This document shows positions 4,949 through 61,450 of a stretch of 64,000 nucleotides of DNA, one piece after another (within the stretch, counting starts at the first letter, position 1; every line of letters begins with the position of its first letter). A program made the translations under genes and the position numbers. The stretch comes from Hypanus sabinus (taxonomy: Eukaryota): positions 17,732,001-17,796,000 of the forward strand of contig NC_082725.1 of assembly GCF_030144855.1 (NCBI RefSeq), read 5' to 3'. Below the pieces are notes generated by a model. It was given only the letters and a program-made list of their open reading frames with translations, was not told the DNA's origin and searched no databases.

Positions 4949-5848
4949 CAATGTTCCTCCAATTATTTTTACAGCTGCACAGACCAACCAATGTTCTGAG
5001 CATAACATTTTTACATGGCCTGAAAACTGTGCAGCACTTTAAATTCTTTTTGTAATATGCATACTATGAATATTTAAAATTAAAATTGAAAAATTACATA
5101 CTTTTGATTTTATTTATTATAACCGTATAACCATTTAACAATTACAGCACAGAAGCAGGCCATCTTGGCCCTTCTAGTCCGTGCCGAATGCTTACTCTCA
5201 CCTAGTCCCACCGACCTGCACTCAGCCTCTATTCCTTTCTTGTCCATATACCTATCCAATTTTACTTTAAATGACAATACCGAACCTGCCTCTACCACTT
5301 CTACTGTAAGCTCTTTCCACACAGCTACCACTCTCTGAGTAAAGAAACTCCCCCTCGTGTTACTCCTAAACTTTTGCCCCCTAACTCTCAACTCACGTCC
5401 TCTTGTTTGAATCTCCCCTACTCTCAATGGAAAAAGCCTATCCACATCAACTCTATCTATCCCCCTCATAATTTTAAATACCTCTATCAAGTCCCCCCTC
5501 AACCTTCTACGCTCCAAAGAATAAAGACCTAACTTGTTCAACCTTTCCCTGTAACTTAGGTGCTGAAACCCAGGTAACAGTCTGGTAAATCTCCTCTGCA
5601 CTCTCTCGATTTTGTTGACATCTTTCCTATAATTTGGTGACCAGAACTGTACACAATACCCCAAATAATTCAAACTCAAAATAATTGAAGGGTATAATGA
5701 AATACAGTACAACAAAAAAAATCATTTACGTTTCATAAACCTTTCCTAGCTGCATCGAATTCCTGTTTCGCAGCAACCATGGCTATGTGAGCTGGGACAT
5801 TTCAGTTACTGCACGGCCATGCACACGCACAGCTTAGAGGGCATAGTG
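4949..5848. mobile_element. hAT-like non-autonomous element interrupted by CR1
   Basis: Ends CAATGTTCCTCC / GCTTAGAGGGCATAGTG; homologous to 51040-51632. Confidence 0.5.
5118..5665 (-). mobile_element. 5'-truncated CR1 3' fragment, same young subfamily as 56275-60762
   Basis: YCVQFWSPNYRKDVNKIERVQRRFTR... nearly identical to 60225-60760; (TTATATGG)-like tail. Confidence 0.93.
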
Positions 5849-23104: not shown

Positions 23105-26100
23105 ACATAGAGCCATAGAGTCCAACAGAAAAACAGCACAGAAACAGGCTATTCAGCCCATCTAGTCCATGCCAAAACCATTTAAACTGCCTACTCCCAT
23201 CAACATGTACTAAGGCCATAGCCCTCCATACCCCTATCATCCACGTACCTATCCAAACTTCTCTGAAAAGTTGAAATCGAGCTCGCATACACCACTTGTG
23301 CTTGGAGCTCATTCCACACTCTCATGACCCTCTTTGTGAAGAAGTTACCCCTCACTTTCTCCTTAAACTTCTCACCTTTCACCCCTAACCATGACCTCTG
23401 GTTGTAATTCCACCCAACCTCAGTGGAAAAAGCCTGCTTACATTTACCAATCTATACCCCTCATTATTTTGTCTACCTCTATCAAATCTCCCCTCATTCT
23501 TCTATGTTCTAAGGAATAAGGTCCTAACCTTTTCAATCTTTCTTTATAAATCAGGTCCTCCAGACCGGCAACATCTTTGTAAATTTTCTCTGCACTCTTT
23601 CAACCTTGTTTACATCTTTCCTGTAGGTAGGTGACTACATATAATACTCAAAATTAGGCCTCACCATGTCTTTTACAACTTCAATATAACGTCCCATCTC
23701 CCGTATCTGAAAACATTGATTTCTGAAAGCCAATGTGCCAGAAGGTTATTTACAGTTCTATCTACATGTGACATCACTTTCAATAAATTATGGACTTGTA
23801 TTCCCAGATCCCTTTATCTACCACAGTCCTCCATTCACTGTGTAAGCCCACCCTTGCTGGTCCTACCAAAGTGCAAAGCCTCACATTTGTCTGCATTAAA
23901 TTCAACCTGCCACTTTTAAGCCCATTCTTCTAGAAGATCACTCTACAGGCTGTGATAGCCTTCCTCGCCGTCAACTACACCCCAATCTTGCTGTCATCCA
24001 CAAATTTGCTAATCCAGTTGACCACATTATTATCCAGATCATGACAAACAACAACTGACTGACCACACACAAAGCCATTCTGAATAACCTTAGTCCACGT
24101 CTATCCAAATACTTATATATATATCCAGTCCCTTAGAATACATGCCAATGACTTTTCTACAACTGTCCAACTTCCCAGCCTATACTTCTCTGGTTTATGT
24201 TTACAGCTTCTTTTAAACAGCAGGAAAATGCAGGTTACCCTCCAATCCTCTGGTACCTCTCCTGCCACTAAGATTGATTTAAGTATCTCTGCTAGGCACC
24301 TGGCAATTTCTGTGCTTGCTCCCACAGAGTCAGTGTGAACACCTTGTAAGACCCTGGAAATTTATTCACCCTGATTTGCCTCAGTATAACAAACACCTCC
24401 TCGGTAATCTGTATAGGATCCATGAAGTCGGTGGCACTTTGCCTCACTTCTATAGACTCTGTGTCCATTTTCTGAGTAAATACAGATGCAAAAGATTTAT
24501 TTAAGATCTTACCCATCTGTTTTGGCTCATCACATTAATTGCCATTCTGATCTTCCAAGGGACCAATTTTGTCCCTTGCAATCCTTTTGCTCTTAACATA
24601 CCTGTAGAATCCTTTAGGATTCTCCTTCTTATTGCCTGCTAGAGCAACTTCATGCCTTCTTTTAGCCCTCCTGATTCCTTTCTTAAGTCCTCTCTTACAT
24701 TTCTTGTACTCCATAAGTACCTCTTTTATTCCTACCTGCCTATACCTGTTATGCACCTCCTTTTTTACTCGTAATCAGAGCCTCAATATCTCTCGAAAAC
24801 CAAGGTTCTCTACATCTGTTATCTTTACTTTTTATTCTGACAGGCTCATACAAGCTTTATACTTTCAGAATTTCACTTGTAACATCCTCCCACTTACTAA
24901 GCACACCTTTGCCAGAAAACAGCCTGTCCCGATCCACACTTGTCAAATCATTTCTGATACCATCAAAATTGGCCTTTCGCCAATTTAGAATCTCAACCCA
25001 AAGACCAGAACTATCTTTATGCATATTTACTCTTAAACTAATGGCATTGTGATCAGCAGATACAAAGTGTTCCCTTACACAAACTTCTGTCAGCCGCCCT
25101 GTTTCATCCCCTAATAGCAGATCCAGTATCGCACGCCGTCTTGTTGGGACCTCTACATACTGATGAAGGAAACTTTCCTGAATGCATTTGGCAAACTCTA
25201 TCACATCTAGTCATTTTACAGTTTGAGATTCCTAGCCAATATGTGGAAAGTTAAAATCACCTACGATAACAACCTTGCAATAGCCTGTGATCGTTTTACA
25301 AATTTGTTCCTTTAAATCCCTAGCACTGTTGGATGGTCTGTAATATAGCCCCATTAATGTGGTCGTACCTTTCCTATTTCTCAGTTCCATCCATTTCAGC
25401 TCACTAGTCAAGTTCTCCGGTCTGTCCTGCTAGTGCACTGTTGTGACATTTTCCCCGACTAGTAACACCACTCTTCCTCCTTTAATCCCTTCCACTCTGT
25501 CATATCTAAAACAACAGAACCCCAGAATATTGAACTGCCAGTCCTACCCCTCCTGCAACAAAGTCTCACTAATGGGTAGAATGTCTTAATTCCAGGTGTT
25601 TATCCATACTCTCAGTTCATCCGCTTCTCCTACGATACTTCCTGCATTGAAATATACACAGCTCAGAACATTAGTCACACCATGTTCAACCTTTTGATTC
25701 CTGACTTTGTCTGGGGTCTTACCAACATCCGTCTCCACAACCTCTCTACTATCTGTTCTGGCACTATGGTCCCCATCTCCCTGCATCTCTAGTTAAGACC
25801 CCACTGTGCAGCATCAGCAAACCTTCCCACTCGGATATTAGTCCCCCACCAGTTCAGGTGCAACCATCCCTTCTGTATAAGTCCCACTTTCCCCAGAAGA
25901 GAGCTCTATGATCCAAGGATCTTCTGCCCTCCCTCCTATACCTACTTCTTAGCCTCATGTTAAGCTGTATATTCCTCCTAGTTCTGGCCTCACTAACACA
26001 TGGATTGGGTAGCATTCCTGAGATCACAACCCTGGATGTCTTGCCCTTTAACTTAGCACCTAACACCCTGAACTCCCCGTGCAGAAACTCTTCATTCATT
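23105..26100 (-). mobile_element. Degenerate CR1 LINE of a second subfamily (ORF1 esterase C-terminus, ORF2 with internal deletions, 3' end)
   Basis: Fragments TSRVVISGMLP, CVYFNAGSI, NPKGFYRYVKSKR, GNFFTKRVMRVWNEL, with many stops and frameshifts. Confidence 0.9.
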
Positions 26101-37859: not shown

Positions 37860-38385
37860 AGAACACTACAGCACAGGAACAGCCCTTTGGCCCATCCAGC
37901 TGCTGTTCTGCCTAACCCCGTTGATGCACATCTGGACCATTACCTTCCATTCTCCTGCATCCATGTGCTTATCCAAACTTCTCTTAAATGTTGCAATCGA
38001 ATTCACATCCACTTCTTCGACTAGTAGCTTGATCCACACTCACACCACCCTTTCAGTGAATAAGCTCCCCCTCAGCTTCCCTTTCAATTTGACCTCAGCT
38101 TCTAGTCTCACCCAATCTCAGTTGGAAAAATCCTGCTTGCACTTATCCATCTATAATCCCCATAATGTTGTTTTTTAACCATATAACCGTATAACAATTA
38201 CGGCACGGAAACAGGCCATCTTGGCCATTCTAGTCCATGCCGAACGCTTACTCTCACCTAATCCCACTGACCCACACTCAGCCCATAACCCTCCGTTCCT
38301 TTCCTGTCCATATACCTATCCAATTTTGCTTTAAATGACAATACCGAACCTGCCTCTACCACTTCTACTGGAAGCTCATTCCATT
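37860..38385 (-). mobile_element. Two adjacent CR1 3' fragments
   Basis: 38177-38385 matches 5118-5315 including the (CCATATAA) tail; 37860-38170 is an older CR1 3' end. Confidence 0.75.
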
Positions 38386-52429: not shown

Positions 52430-53610
52430 GCTCTGATTGGAGGGTCGTCCCTTTAGAACAGAGATGGGGAGAAATTTCGTTAACCAGAGGGTGGTGAATC
52501 TCTGGAGTTCGATGGCAATGAGGGTCAATTCATTGGGTATACTTAAAGCTGAGGTTGGTAGGTTCTTGATTAGAAAGGGTGTCAAAGGTTACAGGGAGAA
52601 AACAGGAGAATGAAGTTGAGAGGGATAATAATTCGACCATGATCGAATGGCAGAGCAGAAAACATACCCTTCTGCCCAACTGGCCAATGCAGACTACAGC
52701 ATCCTTCCTGCTGGTCCCAGCCTCCTACATTTGACCTATAAACCTCAAAGCAGCTCCCCTCACTGTGGATATCCAACTACATTTTAAACAATGCAATTGT
52801 ACATGCCTCTATCACTTCCTCTGGCACCTCACTCCAGGTACTCAGTATCCTAGGTGTAAATGAAAAATACCTCTCAGGTCTATTATAAATATATTCCTCT
52901 TATCTTGCATCAGTGCTCTGGAGTTTTGGACTCCCCAGCCCTGGGGAAAAGATTATGATTGCCCACTTTATCCATACCACTCATGATTTTGTACATTTCT
53001 TTGTGGTCACCACTCATTCTTCTGTGCTCTGGGGAATAAAGATCCAACATGGTTAACTTTTCCCTATAATTCAGACCATGTAAATCTCTTCTGCGCCCTC
53101 TCTGGTTTGTCAACGTCTTTCAAAATCAGGTGACCAAAACTGTACACAGTTCTTTAAGTTCAGCCTCACTATCACTGCAACATAATGTCCCTGCTGGCCC
53201 TCATCTTGATACTCTGACTGATGGAGGCCGACATGCTAAATGCCTTCACCCATCTGTCTACTTGTATGACCACTTTCAGCAAACTGAGCACTTGTACATC
53301 TGTCCTTTTACATTGAACATGGCTATCCTGATTGCTAGTGCTACACTCTTTGGTAACTCCCTTGAGTTACCCCTCCCTTGCCAATCTAGTTTAAACCCTC
53401 CCAGTGTCAAAGGCAGATTTCCCCACTAGGATCTTGGTCCCAATCTAGTTCAAGTGCAACCTGTCTCTCTTGACAGGTTGCCTCTACCCTAGAAGAGATG
53501 CCAGTGACCAAGATCCCAAGTTGCTTGCCCTTGCTCCAACTTTTCAACCACACATTCATATTGCTCATCTTGCTACCTCTGCACATGGCACCAGAGGTAA
53601 TCTGAGATCA
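52430..53610. mobile_element. Old CR1 fragments in both orientations; the minus-strand piece includes an ORF1/ORF2 junction
   Basis: LNYREKL..LDLYSPE; minus strand GGGAGGGTTTAAACTAG at 53386-53402. Confidence 0.65.
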
Positions 53611-55890: not shown

Positions 55891-56280
55891 TCTATGAGTT
55901 AGGATATCTCTGTAAATTTAGGCGTGTAGTACTGCTCTGTTGCTCTTTTCATGTGTCAAAATCCCCAAGTCAAAGACAATCAAGTCTAGGACGAGAAGAA
56001 TAATAGCTGAAGCTTCGTAAATTATTGATTACAGGAAGGTGGTCAAAAGAGTTCCATAAAGTATTTTGCAAATGCTTATAACATTCATAGCATAATGTTA
56101 AGCAACATATGATGGCCAAATTCTATGAAGCAAAACTTTTTCCTTTACCCCTGCTATGCATGCAGCTTTGTAAAGCAAAACCAAACATTTATAACTTCTT
56201 CTCAATGGAATATTAATCATGGGGGATAATGAAATTTATTCCCAGCAGGAGATCAAAAATTACATAAGGTCAATGTCCTC

Positions 56281-56600
56281 TTTTGGAAGAGGACAGCGAG
56301 GCTTTGAGAGGAAGTGCGGCAGTGGCCATTTTCAAATTGTCCAATTGCTTCTCAGATCGGAGTTCTGAGAGGAGGGACTGCACAGGCACGTGAAGGAGGC
56401 CTGGGAAGGAGGGAAGATATAAAAAGGAGAGACTGGCTGAGGTAGTTCTCTTTCGGAAGAGGACAGCGAGGCTTTGAGAGGAAGTGCGGCGGCGGCCATT
56501 TTCAAATTGTCCAATTGCTTCTCAGATTGGAGTTCTGAGAGGCAGGACTGCGCAGGCGCATGTAGGAGGCCTGGGAAGGAGGGAAGATATAAAAAGAACG
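56281..56600 (+). promoter_or_regulatory. Two tandem ~170-bp monomers at the CR1 5' end with ETS, YY1, NRF1 and TATA-like motifs (putative internal promoter)
   Basis: GAAGAGGACAGCGAGG at 56286 and 56456; each unit has GAGGAAGTG, GGCCATTTT and GATATAAAAA; unit 2 has TGCGCAGGCGCA. Confidence 0.6.
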
Positions 56601-56745
56601 CAGCCTTAAGAAGCGAGCAGCTTCGTTTGCGGGCAGCGGAGTGCACCGGGAGCAGAGTGTAGGGCTTGGGCTCAAGGGGCTTAGGCGGAAGAGGGCAGAG
56701 TAGGCTTATCTTTTAGTTCTTGTTATTTTCAGTTATTCGGGAAGT

Positions 56746-57675
56746 ATGAGTGTGAGGGCAGCTTGTTGTTCTCAGTGTCGGATGTGGGAGGTCCTGGAGT
56801 CTCCGAGCCTCCTGGACATCCACATCTGCACCAGGTGTACCGAACTGCAGCTCCTGAGGGACCGAGTTAGGGAACTGGAGCTGCAGCTCAATGACCTTCG
56901 CCTGGTCAGGGAGAGTGAGGAGGTGATAGAGAGGAGTTACAGGCAGGTGGTCACACCGGGGCCACGGGAGGCAGATAGGTGGGTCACGGTCAGGAAGGGG
57001 AAGAGGCAGGTACTAGAGAGTACCCCGGTGGCTGTACTCCTTGACAATAAGTACTCATGTTTGAGTACTGTTGGGGGGGACAGCCTACCTGATGGAAGTG
57101 ACAGTGGCCGGGTCTCCGGCACAGAGGACGGCCCTGTAGCTCAGAAGGGTAGGGATAGAAGAAAGAGGACCATAGTAATAGGGGACTAGATAGTCAGGGG
57201 TTCAGACAGGCGGTTCTGTGGAGGTGATCGGGAGTCCCGGATGGTAGTTTGCCTCCCTGGTGCCAGGGTTCGGGACGTTTTTGATCACGTCCAAGATATC
57301 CTTAAGTGGGAGGGTGAGGAGCCAGAGGTCGTGGTACATGTAGGTACCAATGACATAGGTAGGAAAGGGGAAGAGGTCCTGAAACGAGAGTATAGGGAAT
57401 TAGGAAGGCAGTTAAGAAGAAGGACCACAAAGGTAGTAATCTCGGGATTACTGCCTGTGCCACGCGACAGTGAGGGTAGGAATGGAATTAGGTGGAGGAT
57501 GAATGCGTAGCTGTGGGATTGGAGCAGGGGGCAGGGATTCAAGTTTCTGGATCATTGGGACCTCTTCTGGGGCAGGCGTGACCTGTTCAAGAAGGACGGG
57601 TTACACTTGAATCCTGGGGGGACCAATATCCTAGTGGGGAGGTTTGCTAGGGCTACAGGGCAGACTTTAAACTAG
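56746..57675 (+). pseudogene. CR1 ORF1: CxxC..CxxC zinc finger, coiled coil, SGNH/GDSL esterase domain; two premature TAG stops
   Basis: One frame from ATG 56746 to TAG 57673-57675: CSQC...CTRC, LRDRVRELELQL, TIVIGD* (stop at the catalytic Ser codon, 57187), CLPGARV, HVGTND, W->TAG at 57508, DGLHLN. Confidence 0.9.
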
Positions 57676-60600
57676 TAAGATGGGGGAGTGGGAATCAATT
57701 TGAGGAAACTATGGGAAAGGAGGTTAGTTCACCAGTAGAGCAAGTAAGTAGACAGTGTGTGAGGGAGGAAAGGCAGGTGATGGAGAAGGGATGCGCTCAG
57801 CCCGAAGATGTAGGGGAGAAGAAAGAAAAGGATAATAAATTTGAATGCATTGTTAGGGATGAAAAGAGAGGAGGAGGTGGAGAGTATCTTAAATGTATCT
57901 ATTTTAATGCTAGGAGCATTGTAAGAAAGGTGGATGAGCTTAAAGCGTGAATTGATACCTGGAATTATGATGTTGTAGCTATTAGTGAAACATGGTTGCA
58001 GGAAGGGTGTGATTGGCAACTAAATATTCCTGGATTTAATTGCTTCAGGTGTGATAGAGTAGGAGGGGCCAGAGGAGGAGGTGTTGCATTGCTTGTCCGA
58101 GAAAATCTTATGGCGGTGCTTTGGAAGGATAGATTAGAGAGCTCCTCTAGGGAGGCTATTTGGGTGGAATTGAGGAATGGGAAAGGTGTAGTAACACTGA
58201 TTGGAGTGTATTATAGGCCACCTAATGGGGAGCGTAAGTTGGAAGAGCAAATGTGTAAGGAGATAGCAGATATTTGTAGTAAACACAAGGTGGTGATTGT
58301 GCGAGATTTTAATTTTCCACACATAGACTGGGAAGCTCATTCTGTAAAAGGGCTGGATGGTTTAGAGTTTGTGAAATGTGTGCAGGATAGTTTTTTGCAA
58401 CAATACATAGAAGTACCGACTAGAGATGGGGCAGTGTTGATCTCCTGTTAGGGAATGCGATAGGTCAGCTGACAGATGTATGTGTTGGGGAGCACTTCGG
58501 GTCCAGTGATCACAATAGCATTAGCTTCAATATAATTATGGAGAAGGACAGGACAGGACCTAGAGTTGAGATTTTTGATTGGAGAAAGGCTAACTTTGAG
58601 GAGATGCGAAGGGATTTAGAGAGTGGATTGGGTCAAGTTGTTTTATGGGAAGGATGTAATAGAGAAATGGAGGTCATTTAAGGGTGAAATTATGAGTGTA
58701 CAGAATCTTTATGTTCCTGTTAGGTTGAAAGGAAAGATTAAAGGTCTGAAAGCACCATGGTTTTCAAGGAATATTAGAAATTTGGTTCGGAAAAAGAGGG
58801 ATGTCTACAATAGATATAGGCAGCATGGAGTAAAGGAATTGCTCGAGGAATATAAAGAATGTAAAAGGAATCTTAAGAAAGAGATTAGAAAAGCTAAAAG
58901 AAGATACGAGGTTGGTTTGGCAAATAAGGTGAAAGTAAATCCGAAAGGTTTCTACAGTTATATTAAAAGCAAGAGGATAGTGAGGGATAAAATTGGCCCC
59001 TTAGAGAATCAGAGTGGTCAGCTATGTGTGGAGCTGAGGGAGATGGGAGAGATGTTGAACGATTTCTTCTCTTCGGTATTCACTAAGGAGAAGGATATTG
59101 AATTGTGTAAGGTGTGGGAAACAAGTAAGGAAGTTATGGAACCTATGGCAATTAAAGAGGTGGAAGTACTAGCGCTTTTAAGAAATTTAAAAGTCGATAA
59201 ATCTCCGGGTCCTGACAGGATATTCCCCAGGACCTTGAGGGAAGTTTGTGTAGAAATAGCAGGAGCTCTGCCAGAGATCTTTAAGATGTCATTAGAAACG
59301 AGGATTGTGCCGGAGGATTGGCGTATTGCTCATGTGGTTCCATTGTTTAAAAAGGGTTCTAGAAGTAAGCCTGGCAATTATAGACCTGTCAGTTTGACAT
59401 CAGTGGTGGGTAAATTAATGGAAAGTATTCTTAGAGATTGTATTAATAATTATCTGGATAGACAGGATCTGATTGGGAGTAGCCAGCATGGATTTGTGCA
59501 TGGAAGGTCATGTTTGACAAACCTTATTGAATTTTTTGAAGAAGTTACGAGGAATGTTGACGAGGGTAAGGCAGTGGATGTAACCTATATGGACTTCAGC
59601 AAAGCCTTTGACAAAGTTCCACATGGAAGGTTAGTTAAGAAGGTTCAGTCGTTAGGTATTAATGCTGGAGTAATAAAATGGATTCAACAGTGGCTAGATG
59701 GGAGATGCCAGAGAGTAGTGGTGGATAATTGTTTATCGGGATGGAGGCCGGTGACTAGCGGGGTGCCTCAGGGATCTGTTCTGGGCCCAATGTTGTTTGT
59801 AATATACATAAATGATCTGGATGATGGGGTGGTAAATTGGATTAGTAAGTATGCCGATGATACTAAGGTAGGAGATGTTGTGGATAATGAGGTGGGTTTT
59901 CAAAGCATGCAGGGAGATTTATGCTGGTTAGAAGAATGGGCTGAACGTTGGCAGATGGAGTTTAATGCTGAGAAGTGTGAGGTTCTACATTTTGGCAGGA
60001 ATAATCCAAATAGAACATACAGGGTAAATGGTAGGGCATTGAGGAATGCAGAGGAACAGAGAGATCTAGGAATAACAGTGCATTGTTCCCTGAAGATGGA
60101 GTCTCATGTAGATAGGGTGGTGAAGAAGGCTTTTGGAATGCTGGCCTTTATAAATCAAAGCATTGAGTACAGAAGTTGGGATGTAATGTTAAAATTCTAC
60201 AAGGCATTGGTAAGGCCAAATTTAGAATATTGTGTACAGTTCTGGTCACCGAATATAGGAAAGATATCAATAAATTAGAGAGAGTGCAGAGACGATTTAC
60301 TAGGATGTTACCTGGGTTTCAGCACTTAAGTTACAGAGAAAGGTTGAACAAGTTAGGTCTCTATTCATTGGAGCGTAGAAGGTTGAGGGGGGATTTGATC
60401 GAGGTATTTAAAATTTTGGGAGGGATAGATAGAGTTGACGTGAATAGGCTGTTTCCATTGAGAGTAGGGGAGATTCAAACGAGAGGACATGATTTGAGAG
60501 TTAGGGGGCAGAAGTTTAAGGGAAACACGAGGGGGTATTTCTTTACTCAGAGAGTGATAGCTGTGTGGAATGAGCTTCCTGTAGAAGTAGTAGAGGCCAG

Positions 60601-60691
60601 TTCAGTTGTGTCATTTAAGGTAAAATTTGATAGGTATATGGACAGGAAAGGAGTGGAGGGTTATGGGCTGAGTGCGGGTAGGTGGGACTAG
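57666..60691 (+). pseudogene. CR1 ORF2: apurinic-like endonuclease + reverse transcriptase; one stop and two 1-bp frameshifts
   Basis: CIYFNARSI, ISETWL, DFNFPHIDW, SDH (APE); KSPGPD, NYRPVSLTS, DFSKAFDKV, GVPQGSVLGP, YADD (RT); TGA at 57948, frameshifts near 58440 and 60255. Confidence 0.93.
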
Positions 60692-60949
60692 GTGAGATTA
60701 GGAGTTCGGCACAGACTAGGAGGGCCGAGATGGCCTGTTTCCGTGCTGTGATTGTTATATGATTAAGTCAGAAATTATTATGAACAGAAAATAATGAAAA
60801 GGACATTGGACAAGGTCAGAGACAGAGTATTAAGGCTATTATAGTCCTGATGAAGGCTCTTGGACTGTTTATTCCTCCTCATAAATGCTGCCTGACCTAA
60901 TGAGTTCTCCAGCTTTTGTGTGTGTTACTTTGCGATTATTAATGTACCC

Positions 60950-61450
60950 TATGCCAAACAAGGTAAATTCTCAGGCAGGAAAGTTCAGTGAAGGTATCAA
61001 GTAACAGCTGATTAATTGTCAGACTTCTGGGAGACTGTCAACACCTACTCATCAACAATTACTCACAAGCTGAAAAGATACCTTGCCAGACATGGTTTCC
61101 CTGAGGTGGCAACCACAGATAAAGGACTGGGATGAAGATCATAACAGAGATATAAATATCAGAAGATTCGTTATCATTTGAGGAAGATCACTGAGGAGGC
61201 TTGCTTGATGGAAGCATAGCTGGAAACACTGGAGGAAGTTCCACCAACCCTGCAGGGCAGGAAGACCACGGCTCAACCAAAGGCCCCAGAAGAACCCCAA
61301 AAAATTTGGACCATTTGGACAGTATGTCATGCCAAGCGCTTAGAAGATTATTGCGCAATAGGAATTCAGACAGAAACTATGCATTTATTTTGGATATTTA
61401 TTTTTTCTACCCTCTTGATTATCATTATTAGAGCAGGGAAGAAATGCACA
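60950..61450 (+). mobile_element. Gypsy integrase relic
   Basis: SSTITHKLKRYLARHGFPEVATTDKG at about 61050-61127, similar to FARHGIPE.V.SDNG. Confidence 0.55.

What the first reader, a model, noticed from the sequence alone, without database searches (positions are those of the whole stretch)
57660..57720. Candidate programmed -1 ribosomal frameshift (U_UUA_AAC) fusing CR1 ORF1 to ORF2
Seen: ORF1 ends ...ACT TTA AAC TAG. The heptamer T TTA AAC (57666-57672) is in the exact X XXY YYZ phase, immediately before the stop. ORF2 lies in the -1 frame and is open from the slip site (TTT AAA CTA GTA AGA TGG GGG...) into the APE domain, and a G-rich tract (TGGGGGAGTGGG) starts about 8 nt downstream. 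Established: U_UUA_AAC is the slippery site used by coronavirus 1a/1b, whereas L1 ORF2 is generally thought to be translated by termination-reinitiation. Inference: this LINE may make a gag-pol-like esterase-APE-RT fusion by -1 frameshifting. I do not know whether this has been demonstrated for CR1. An in-frame ATG at 57711 leaves reinitiation as an alternative.
Basis: partly seen in the sequence, partly recalled or inferred. Interest (0 to 1): 0.85.

Follow-up and report, generated by a model that had tools for sequence, protein, structure and literature searches.

The report
Conserved frameshift signal in CR1 LINEs
A dead copy of a CR1-type jumping gene keeps a "slippery" seven-letter signal at the end of its first gene, and related elements from rays to turtles and invertebrates keep it too, which suggests they make their copying enzyme as a fusion protein by a ribosomal frameshift, as retroviruses do.

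Summary
T_TTA_AAC (57666-57672) is in X_XXY_YYZ phase, TAG follows at once, and ORF2 (APE-RT) lies in the -1 frame, open from 57651. This copy is dead, with stops in ORF1 and stops and frameshifts in ORF2, so it is a fossil of the signal.

The signal looks selected:
- In about 1,170 raw reads and contigs from four organisms, no position of 57666-57675 varies at 4% or more. Flanking positions vary at 37-72%.
- Of 51 ORF1 esterase proteins (35-66% identical), 40 end in Asn: LN, GN or KN.
- Their DNA gives U_UUA_AAC, G_GGA_AAC, A_AAA_AAC, U_UUU_UUA or G_UUA_AAC, always in phase and usually touching the stop.
- ORF2 is -1 in all but one intact lineage, often with no ATG before the endonuclease motif.
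- Canonical in-phase heptamers occur at 4 of 3,065 internal ORF1 positions, against 7 of 10 ORF1 ends.

No downstream hairpin is predicted. A conserved G-tract starts 6-10 nt after the stop.

Best reading: programmed -1 frameshifting gives an ORF1p-ORF2p fusion (about 0.78, no experiment). I found no prior description in the searchable literature. First readers noted the same heptamer in five other pieces of this genome.

The parts
56278..56596 (+). 5' UTR tandem repeat (170-bp unit, 1.9 copies) of the LINE
   Evidence: Tandem Repeats Finder, 93% matches
56746..57675 (+). ORF1 with an N-terminal Cys motif, a coiled-coil-like stretch and an SGNH esterase. It is broken by in-frame stops at 57187-57189 and 57508-57510.
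   Evidence: Translation. Pfam Lipase_GDSL_2. PDB 4c1b, the zebrafish ZfL2-1 ORF1p esterase, E 2e-12. 57509 A>G in 93% of reads restores Trp.
57666..57672 (+). Slippery heptamer T_TTA_AAC in ORF1 phase
   Evidence: No variant at 4% or more in four runs. Conserved in other lineages.
57673..57675 (+). ORF1 stop codon TAG, directly after the heptamer
   Evidence: Invariant in reads. TAA or TGA in other lineages.
57676..57681 (+). Variable spacer between the stop and the G-tract
   Evidence: 57676, 57678 and 57680 vary at 37-40% among copies. The equivalent +3..+6 is variable in the reptile-type group.
57682..57692 (+). Conserved G-tract (GGGGGAGTGGG; the family majority has G at 57687), the candidate frameshift stimulator
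   Evidence: G4-6 N1-4 G3-4 begins +6..+10 after the stop in 9 of 10 junctions. Columns +7..+21 are 0.83-1.0 conserved at all codon positions in 48 reptile-type junctions.
57711..57713 (+). ATG in the ORF2 frame, not conserved
   Evidence: It reads AGG in the consensus of 90 reads of a sister subfamily. It is absent in many lineages.
57651..60691 (+). ORF2 in the -1 frame (APE about 57891-58367, RT about 59355-60074). It is decayed: stop at 57948-57950, frameshifts near 58450-58620 and 60280.
   Evidence: Translation. Pfam Exo_endo_phos and RVT_1. 57950 A>G in 94% of reads.
60692..60765 (+). 3' UTR. The element ends near 60765, with no poly-A.
   Evidence: 3'-truncated copies elsewhere in the window align up to here. 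Sequence.
53386..53395 (-). Second junction in the window: a decayed fragment of a 72%-identical subfamily with GGT TTA AAC TAG
25789..25798 (-). Third junction: a decayed 67%-identical copy with GGT CTT AAC TAG AG ATG. It has no slippery heptamer, and ORF2 is still -1.

Best explanation
The site is the fossil, in a dead copy, of a programmed -1 ribosomal frameshift cassette used by CR1-group LINEs that encode an esterase-type ORF1 protein. In a live element, ribosomes translating ORF1 reach its last two sense codons, UUA in the P site and AAC in the A site. A fraction of them slip back one base onto UUU AAA. They then read CUA and continue in the ORF2 frame, giving an ORF1p-APE-RT fusion. For this copy the predicted junction peptide is ...GQTLN|LVRWGSGN... 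Ribosomes that do not slip meet the stop codon at once and release ORF1p. The slip frequency would therefore set a high ORF1p to ORF2p ratio, as for Gag and Gag-Pol. What is shown: the heptamer, its phase, the adjacent stop, the -1 ORF2, their conservation and their covariation. What is inferred: that slippage occurs, how efficient it is, and that the conserved G-tract 7-10 nt downstream stimulates it. How the G-tract would act is unknown. It could bind a protein, form a G-quadruplex with further G runs, or interact directly with the ribosome. The adjacent stop codon may add a pause.
For: (1) Own family. The 10 positions 57666-57675 show no variant at 4% or more in about 1,170 raw reads and in contigs of three more organisms. 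Neighbours vary: 57665 at 52%, 57661 and 57657 at 72%, and 57676 to 57682 at about 40%. Sister subfamilies keep TTTAAAC with either TAG or TAA while their flanks differ.
(2) Proteins. Of 51 representative ORF1 proteins that end 15-45 residues after the DGxHx motif, 40 end in Asn: 30 LN, 6 GN, 2 KN. They come from a ray, an eel, a frog, turtles, lizards and a snake.
(3) DNA. U_UUA_AAC is found in the window, L002, L004, L005, L091 and 45 of 57 reptile-type junctions. G_GGA_AAC is in L001, L006, L011 and L012. A_AAA_AAC is in L003. U_UUU_UUA is in L008. G_UUA_AAC is in L015 and L014. All are in phase. The X-run changes together with the third base of the preceding codon.
(4) The tree shows LN, GN and KN switching within clades; for example, L091 with U_UUA_AAC sits inside the G_GGA_AAC clade.
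(5) Where the path is open, ORF2 is -1 in 26 junctions, +1 in 3 and 0 in none.
(6) Of 36 junctions open from the heptamer to the APE N motif, 18 have no ATG in between.
(7) Background rate: canonical in-phase heptamers occur at 4 of 3,065 internal positions against 7 of 10 ORF1 ends, binomial 1.7e-15.
(8) Column conservation shows two islands, heptamer plus stop and the G-tract. They are separated by a variable 4-nt spacer, while ORF1 third positions vary at 0.42-0.6.
Against: There is no experimental, ribosome-profiling or peptide evidence. No stable downstream hairpin is predicted (z-scores -0.2 to +1.7 in most junctions), no partner for the G-tract was found, and there is no Rfam frameshift-element hit. 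Heptamer type follows clades, so the number of independent switches is small, about 4-10, and the binomial P overstates independence. There are exceptions. L010 is an intact element with ORF2 in +1 and a T6 run. L009 (G_GAA_AAC) and L007 (G_UCA_AAC) are non-canonical. Window copy 2 has TCTTAAC with an ATG 2 nt after the stop. From established knowledge, human L1 ORF2 can be translated without an AUG by an unconventional reinitiation route, so the lack of an AUG alone is not decisive. The G-tract also encodes a Gly-rich peptide in the -1 frame.
Confidence: 0.78

Rival explanations
1. ORF2 is made by termination-reinitiation or another internal initiation after the ORF1 stop, as in SART1 (UAAUG) or human L1. 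Under this reading, the conserved TTTAAAC-stop and G-tract are an RNA signal that holds the post-termination ribosome.
For: The stop codon is directly at the site in most lineages. An ATG lies 36 nt downstream in this copy and 2 nt downstream in copy 2. A conserved non-hairpin motif follows the stop. The 2013 review PMC3894237 treats reinitiation or an IRES as the options for non-LTR ORF2.
Against: It does not explain why the last 7 nt are always a tandem-slippage heptamer in ORF1 phase, nor why the X-run covaries across UUU, GGG and AAA. It does not explain why ORF2 is locked to the -1 frame. There is no ATG in 18 of 36 intact paths, and ATG 57711 is not conserved. In L008 and L014 the heptamer sits two codons before the stop.
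Confidence: 0.12
2. The heptamer is a by-product of protein constraint on the ORF1p C-terminus (Leu-Asn) plus shared ancestry, and has no role in decoding.
For: The LN ending is very widely conserved at a fixed distance of 21 residues after DGxHx. Heptamer type follows phylogeny.
Against: Synonymous positions are fixed: Leu is always TTA, Asn is always AAC, and the preceding codon always ends in T, across 6 different codons. The alternative endings GN and KN are just those that give GGGAAAC and AAAAAAC, each with a matching preceding base. Upstream ORF1 third positions vary freely.
Confidence: 0.05
3. The frame change is made at the nucleic-acid level, by transcriptional slippage or editing at the A/T runs, rather than on the ribosome.
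For: None was found. It is listed only because the frames differ by one base at a short homopolymer pair.
Against: Runs of three A or three T are far shorter than known polymerase slippage sites. No insertions or deletions were seen at the site in laid reads or contigs, including RNA-labelled runs among the holders. This is weak evidence, since most of that data is DNA.
Confidence: 0.02

Closest known systems
Retroviral and LTR-retrotransposon gag-pol -1 frameshifting (HIV-1 U_UUU_UUA, MMTV A_AAA_AAC), and the domesticated PEG10 gene (G_GGA_AAC). These are cited from established knowledge.
   Same: The canonical heptamers are the same. An abundant upstream structural or accessory protein and a rare fusion to the RT-bearing protein are made from one mRNA.
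   Different: Those elements use a downstream stem-loop or pseudoknot, and the zero-frame stop is not normally adjacent. Here the element is a non-LTR LINE, the upstream protein is an esterase rather than Gag, the stop touches the heptamer, and the conserved downstream feature is a purine/G-tract.
Coronavirus and arterivirus ORF1a/1b frameshift sites (U_UUA_AAC; equine arteritis virus G_UUA_AAC), from established knowledge
   Same: The heptamers are identical, including the G_UUA_AAC variant seen in L015 and L014.
   Different: No H-type pseudoknot is present and there is no Rfam hit. There is no sequence relationship. The resemblance is convergent use of the same tRNA-slippage chemistry.
Protein-stimulated frameshifting with a linear downstream motif (arterivirus nsp2TF C-rich motif, cardiovirus 2A), from established knowledge
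   Same: A short conserved downstream element at about 8-13 nt, without a strong autonomous structure.
   Different: The motif here is G-rich, the binding factor (if any) is unknown, and no trans-activator was identified.
Known routes to LINE ORF2: SART1 UAAUG coupling, human L1 unconventional reinitiation, 2A peptides in some CR1 and other non-LTR elements (PMC3894237)
   Same: The same biological problem: making a little ORF2p from a bicistronic LINE RNA.
   Different: Those give a separate ORF2p and need no in-phase slippery heptamer. The cassette here predicts a covalent ORF1p-ORF2p fusion.

Membership tests
Programmed -1 ribosomal frameshift signal | Heptamer X_XXY_YYZ in the zero-frame phase | tested here: met
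   T_TTA_AAC at 57666-57672 in ORF1 phase
Programmed -1 ribosomal frameshift signal | Downstream ORF in the -1 frame, open from the slip site into a functional domain | tested here: met
   Open from 57651 to the APE motif at 57900. The same holds in 36 of 73 junctions elsewhere.
Programmed -1 ribosomal frameshift signal | Heptamer conserved beyond coding need, or replaced only by other slippery heptamers | tested here: met
.
Programmed -1 ribosomal frameshift signal | Stimulatory stem-loop or pseudoknot 5-9 nt downstream | tested here: not met
   Folding z-scores are about 0 to +1.7 and no partner sequence was found. A conserved G-tract is found instead. Pseudoknots were not searched exhaustively.
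Programmed -1 ribosomal frameshift signal | A transframe protein is demonstrated | not testable with these tools
   No proteomic or ribosome-profiling data were available.
CR1-group LINE with esterase-type ORF1p | ORF2 with APE endonuclease and reverse transcriptase | tested here: met
   Pfam Exo_endo_phos, Exo_endo_phos_2 and RVT_1
CR1-group LINE with esterase-type ORF1p | ORF1 with an SGNH esterase domain | tested here: met
   Lipase_GDSL_2. 4c1b, the ZfL2-1 ORF1p esterase. The catalytic Ser codon is a stop in this copy.
CR1-group LINE with esterase-type ORF1p | Placement in the CR1 clade rather than L2 by RT phylogeny with reference elements, and a CR1-type 3' end | not tested
   No reference consensus library was available. 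The nearest ORF1 proteins come from a ray, turtles, squamates, a frog and an eel. There is no poly-A at the 3' end.
Termination-reinitiation cassette | A restart AUG overlapping or close to the stop, conserved | tested here: not met
   ATG 57711 is not conserved. There is no ATG in 18 of 36 intact paths.
Coronavirus-type frameshift element | U_UUA_AAC followed by a three-stem or H-type pseudoknot | tested here: not met
   The heptamer is present, but there is no Rfam match at E up to 1 and no stable fold.

The most novel reading that the evidence does not exclude
Esterase-type CR1-group LINEs, the dominant retrotransposons of many vertebrates and also present in invertebrates, generally express their endonuclease-RT as a covalent ORF1p-ORF2p fusion by -1 ribosomal frameshifting. 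The cassette would be of an unusual design: an X_XXA_AAC heptamer abutting the ORF1 stop, plus a G-tract stimulator instead of a pseudoknot. That would be a Gag-Pol-like strategy in non-LTR retrotransposons, conserved for several hundred million years.
Probability: 0.6. Interest if true: 0.88.

Novelty: new variant of a known kind. Interest (0 to 1): 0.8.

Why it matters
How LINEs translate ORF2 is a long-standing open question. A 2013 review says so and does not mention frameshifting, and the large 2016 recoding review lists non-LTR elements only for the fly telomeric HeT-A and TART. A conserved -1 frameshift cassette would give a mechanism for a whole LINE group. It would explain the ORF1p to ORF2p stoichiometry. 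It would imply that ORF2p is physically tied to the lipid-binding esterase protein, which bears on cis-preference and RNP assembly. It would change how CR1 ORF2 should be annotated: many callers start ORF2 inside the endonuclease domain, as. It would also offer a possibly new class of frameshift stimulator, a G-tract plus an adjacent stop. All of this is directly testable with a short reporter.

Tried and rejected
- Downstream RNA structure. Four folds of the window copy and 110-nt folds of ten junctions gave no consistent or stable hairpin. G-quadruplex-aware folding gave nothing consistent. A scan for a long-range pyrimidine partner of the G-tract found no conserved position.
- Rfam. No hit in 56000-61000.
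- TTTAAACTAR elsewhere in the window. The count is no more than chance, and the site at 2794 is unrelated to any LINE.
- Literature. Ten full-text searches and nine papers read found no description of a slippery heptamer at a CR1 or non-LTR ORF1/ORF2 junction. Kapitonov and Jurka 2003 and the original chicken and turtle CR1 papers are not held, so an older remark cannot be excluded.
- P0003 had no encoding contig on record.
- The 20-sequence alignment A1 was too diverse for a locus scan. A2 was used instead.
- Window copy 2's family (TCTTAAC) had no relatives among the fetched loci. Whether its heptamer loss is copy-specific is unresolved.
- Zebrafish ZfL2-1, the active laboratory element. Only its PDB chain could be compared. 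Its junction DNA was not obtained.
Full report
**What is at the site**

The window holds a 4.5-kb LINE on the + strand, at about 56280-60765. Its parts are:
- a 5' UTR with a 170-bp tandem repeat;
- ORF1 at 56746-57675, whose middle part matches the SGNH esterase family and the solved esterase of the zebrafish ZfL2-1 ORF1 protein;
- ORF2 with APE endonuclease and reverse transcriptase.

ORF1 ends ACT TTA AAC TAG. The heptamer T_TTA_AAC (57666-57672) is therefore in exact X_XXY_YYZ phase, and the stop follows directly. ORF2 is in the -1 frame and is open from 57651, across the heptamer, to the first endonuclease motif YFNARS at 57900. The G-tract GGGGGAGTGGG starts 9 nt after the heptamer. An ATG in the ORF2 frame lies at 57711.

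**This copy is dead**

ORF1 has in-frame stops at 57187-57189 (replacing the catalytic Ser of the GDS motif) and at 57508-57510. ORF2 has a stop at 57948-57950 and at least two frameshifts. When public reads are laid on the region, 93-94% read G at 57509 and 57950, which restores Trp codons. These are private decay mutations, so the site is a fossil of whatever the active family carried.

**The family in this genome and its relatives**

The family is very abundant: 22,491 reads were laid from about 1% of one Hi-C run. About 55-69% of its 31-mers are held by runs of ten coded organisms.

On an 85-nt stretch, with every variant at 4% or more listed, none of the ten positions 57666-57675 shows any variant. 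This holds in about 1,170 raw reads of one organism and in the contigs of three others. Flanking positions vary strongly:
- 57665 at 52%, and 57661 and 57657 at 72%;
- 57676, 57678, 57680 and 57682 at 37-40%.

Sister subfamilies whose flanks no longer align still read ...GAGGGTTTAAACTAG or ...TTTAAACTAA. The window's own second fragment at 53386-53395 reads GGT TTA AAC TAG. The ATG at 57711 reads AGG in the consensus of a sister subfamily. First readers of this scan noted the same heptamer in five other pieces of the genome and in the second fragment here.

**Across lineages: proteins**

A profile-free search of the ORF1 esterase piece against 1.84 billion representatives gave 627 hits. Of the 51 that end 15-45 residues after the DGxHx motif, 40 end in Asn: 30 LN, 6 GN, 2 KN. 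Most end exactly 21 residues after the motif. Named members come from an electric ray, an eel, a frog, five turtles, three lizards and a snake.

**Across lineages: DNA**

I fetched DNA for eleven of these proteins and for 80 metagenome loci. Each ending corresponds to a slippery heptamer in phase:

| Ending | Codons | Heptamer | Where |
|---|---|---|---|
| LN | xxT TTA AAC | U_UUA_AAC | L002, L004, L005, L091 and 45 of 57 reptile-type junctions. The other 12 are one-base decays or frame-broken copies; at least four of the latter (L034, L041, L075, L080) still carry TTTAAAC |
| GN | CAG or GCG GGA AAC | G_GGA_AAC | L001, L006, L011, L012 |
| KN | TCA AAA AAC | A_AAA_AAC | L003 |
| FLQV | TCT TTT TTA, two codons before the stop | U_UUU_UUA | L008 |
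| (one group) | | G_UUA_AAC | L015, L014 |

- All three stop codons occur.
- The codon before U_UUA_AAC is ACT, GGT, GCT, TAT, TCT or GAT, always ending in T.
- A tree built on the esterase domain alone shows LN, GN and KN switching within clades. L091 (U_UUA_AAC) sits inside the G_GGA_AAC clade.

**ORF2 frame and start codon**

Where the path from the heptamer to the endonuclease domain is unbroken, ORF2 is -1 in 26 junctions, +1 in 3 and 0 in none (reptile-type set). Across all 73 junctions, 36 run open in -1 from the heptamer into the conserved endonuclease N motif, and 18 of those have no ATG in between. In L001 the gene caller could only start ORF2 inside the endonuclease domain. That start would remove catalytic residues.

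**Statistics**

Canonical in-phase heptamers occur at 4 of 3,065 internal positions of ten ORF1s, but in the last three positions of 7 of the 10. The binomial P is 1.7e-15. This overstates independence because the lineages are related.

In 48 reptile-type junctions, ORF1 third codon positions are only 0.42-0.6 conserved, while columns -12 to +2 (heptamer plus stop) are 0.90-1.0.

**Downstream element**

No stable hairpin is predicted. Folding energies are no better than shuffles in the window copy and in most other junctions. No Rfam family matches, and no conserved pairing partner for the G-tract was found.

What is conserved is the G-tract itself. G4-6 N1-4 G3-4 begins 6-10 nt after the stop in 9 of 10 junctions from very different lineages. 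In the reptile-type set, GAAGGGGGAAGGGGA at +7 to +21 is 0.83-1.0 conserved at all codon positions. It is preceded by a variable 4-nt spacer and followed by variable sequence. The layout is that of a slip site, a spacer and a stimulator, but the stimulator is of an unusual kind. It also encodes a Gly-rich peptide at the start of the ORF2 part, so some of the constraint may be on the protein.

**Mechanism and rivals**

The best reading is tandem -1 slippage of the Leu and Asn tRNAs (or Gly/Lys and Asn) on X_XXA_AAC. This would make an ORF1p-ORF2p fusion, while non-slipping ribosomes terminate at once. I give it about 0.78.
- Reinitiation after the stop (about 0.12) fits the adjacent stop and the occasional nearby ATG. 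It does not explain the phase-locked heptamers that covary across lineages, the fixed -1 frame, or the lineages without an ATG.
- Pure protein constraint on an LN terminus (about 0.05) is contradicted by the fixed synonymous sites and the matching preceding base.
- Slippage at the nucleic-acid level is unlikely on runs of three.

**Exceptions kept in view**

- L010 is an apparently intact element with ORF2 in +1 and a T6 run at the junction.
- L009 (G_GAA_AAC) and L007 (G_UCA_AAC) are non-canonical. L007 is a decayed relative of L015.
- Window copy 2 has TCTTAAC and an ATG 2 nt after the stop.

**Novelty**

Ten full-text searches over about 8.4 million papers found nothing that links a slippery sequence to a non-LTR ORF1/ORF2 junction.
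- The 2016 recoding review mentions non-LTR elements only for HeT-A and TART.
- A 2013 review of non-LTR protein biogenesis calls ORF2 initiation an open question and does not mention frameshifting.
- From memory, overlapping ORFs and possible frameshifts were remarked on for a few insect and plant LINEs in the 1980s-90s. The early CR1 papers are not in the library, so an older passing remark cannot be ruled out.

The mechanism class is well known. Its systematic use by CR1-group LINEs, with a stop-adjacent heptamer and a G-tract, would be a new variant.

**Limits**

All evidence is comparative. The organisms behind most metagenome contigs are unknown. The CR1-versus-L2 clade assignment was not tested against reference elements.

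Noticed in passing
window 56278-56596: A 170-bp tandem repeat (1.9 copies, 93% matches) in the LINE 5' UTR. It may be promoter monomers like those of some L1 families.
   Followed up: no
window 23133-25915 (- strand): A second, 67%-identical decayed LINE copy. Its ORF1 ends GGT CTT AAC TAG AG ATG, so the heptamer is lost, the -1 frame has TAA at that point, and an ATG follows 2 nt after the stop. It could not be decided whether this is copy-specific decay or a subfamily that reinitiates.
   Followed up: partly
window 53330-53470 (- strand): Downstream of the third junction there is a perfect 8-bp hairpin, GGTAACTC/GAGTTACC, about 17 nt after the heptamer. It is the only junction with a clearly negative folding z-score (-1.9).
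   Followed up: partly
L010:2060-2100: An apparently intact esterase LINE (ORF1 415 aa, ORF2 896 aa) nested in the G_GGA_AAC clade. ORF1 ends CAG TTT TTT CAC TAG and ORF2 is in the +1 frame with no ATG before the endonuclease motif. This could be +1 or -2 slippage on the U run, or a one-base homopolymer difference.
   Followed up: partly
L007:1060-1080 and L015:680-700: These elements end ORF1 with two or three consecutive TAG stops directly after the heptamer.
   Followed up: no
window 57200-58200 (runs X1-X20): About 55-69% of the 31-mers of this decayed copy are held by runs of ten different coded organisms, and by three runs labelled RNA. That implies a very slowly diverging or recently shared LINE family across species.
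   Followed up: no
window 5128-5666 and 38184-38383 (- strand): 3'-truncated copies of the same family (86% identity) that end at the same 3' boundary, as expected for 5'-truncated LINE insertions.
   Followed up: no
L018-L090 (metagenome Ga0065711): One JGI 'metagenome' supplies dozens of long contigs full of reptile/turtle-type CR1 copies. Much of it is evidently host animal DNA.
   Followed up: no
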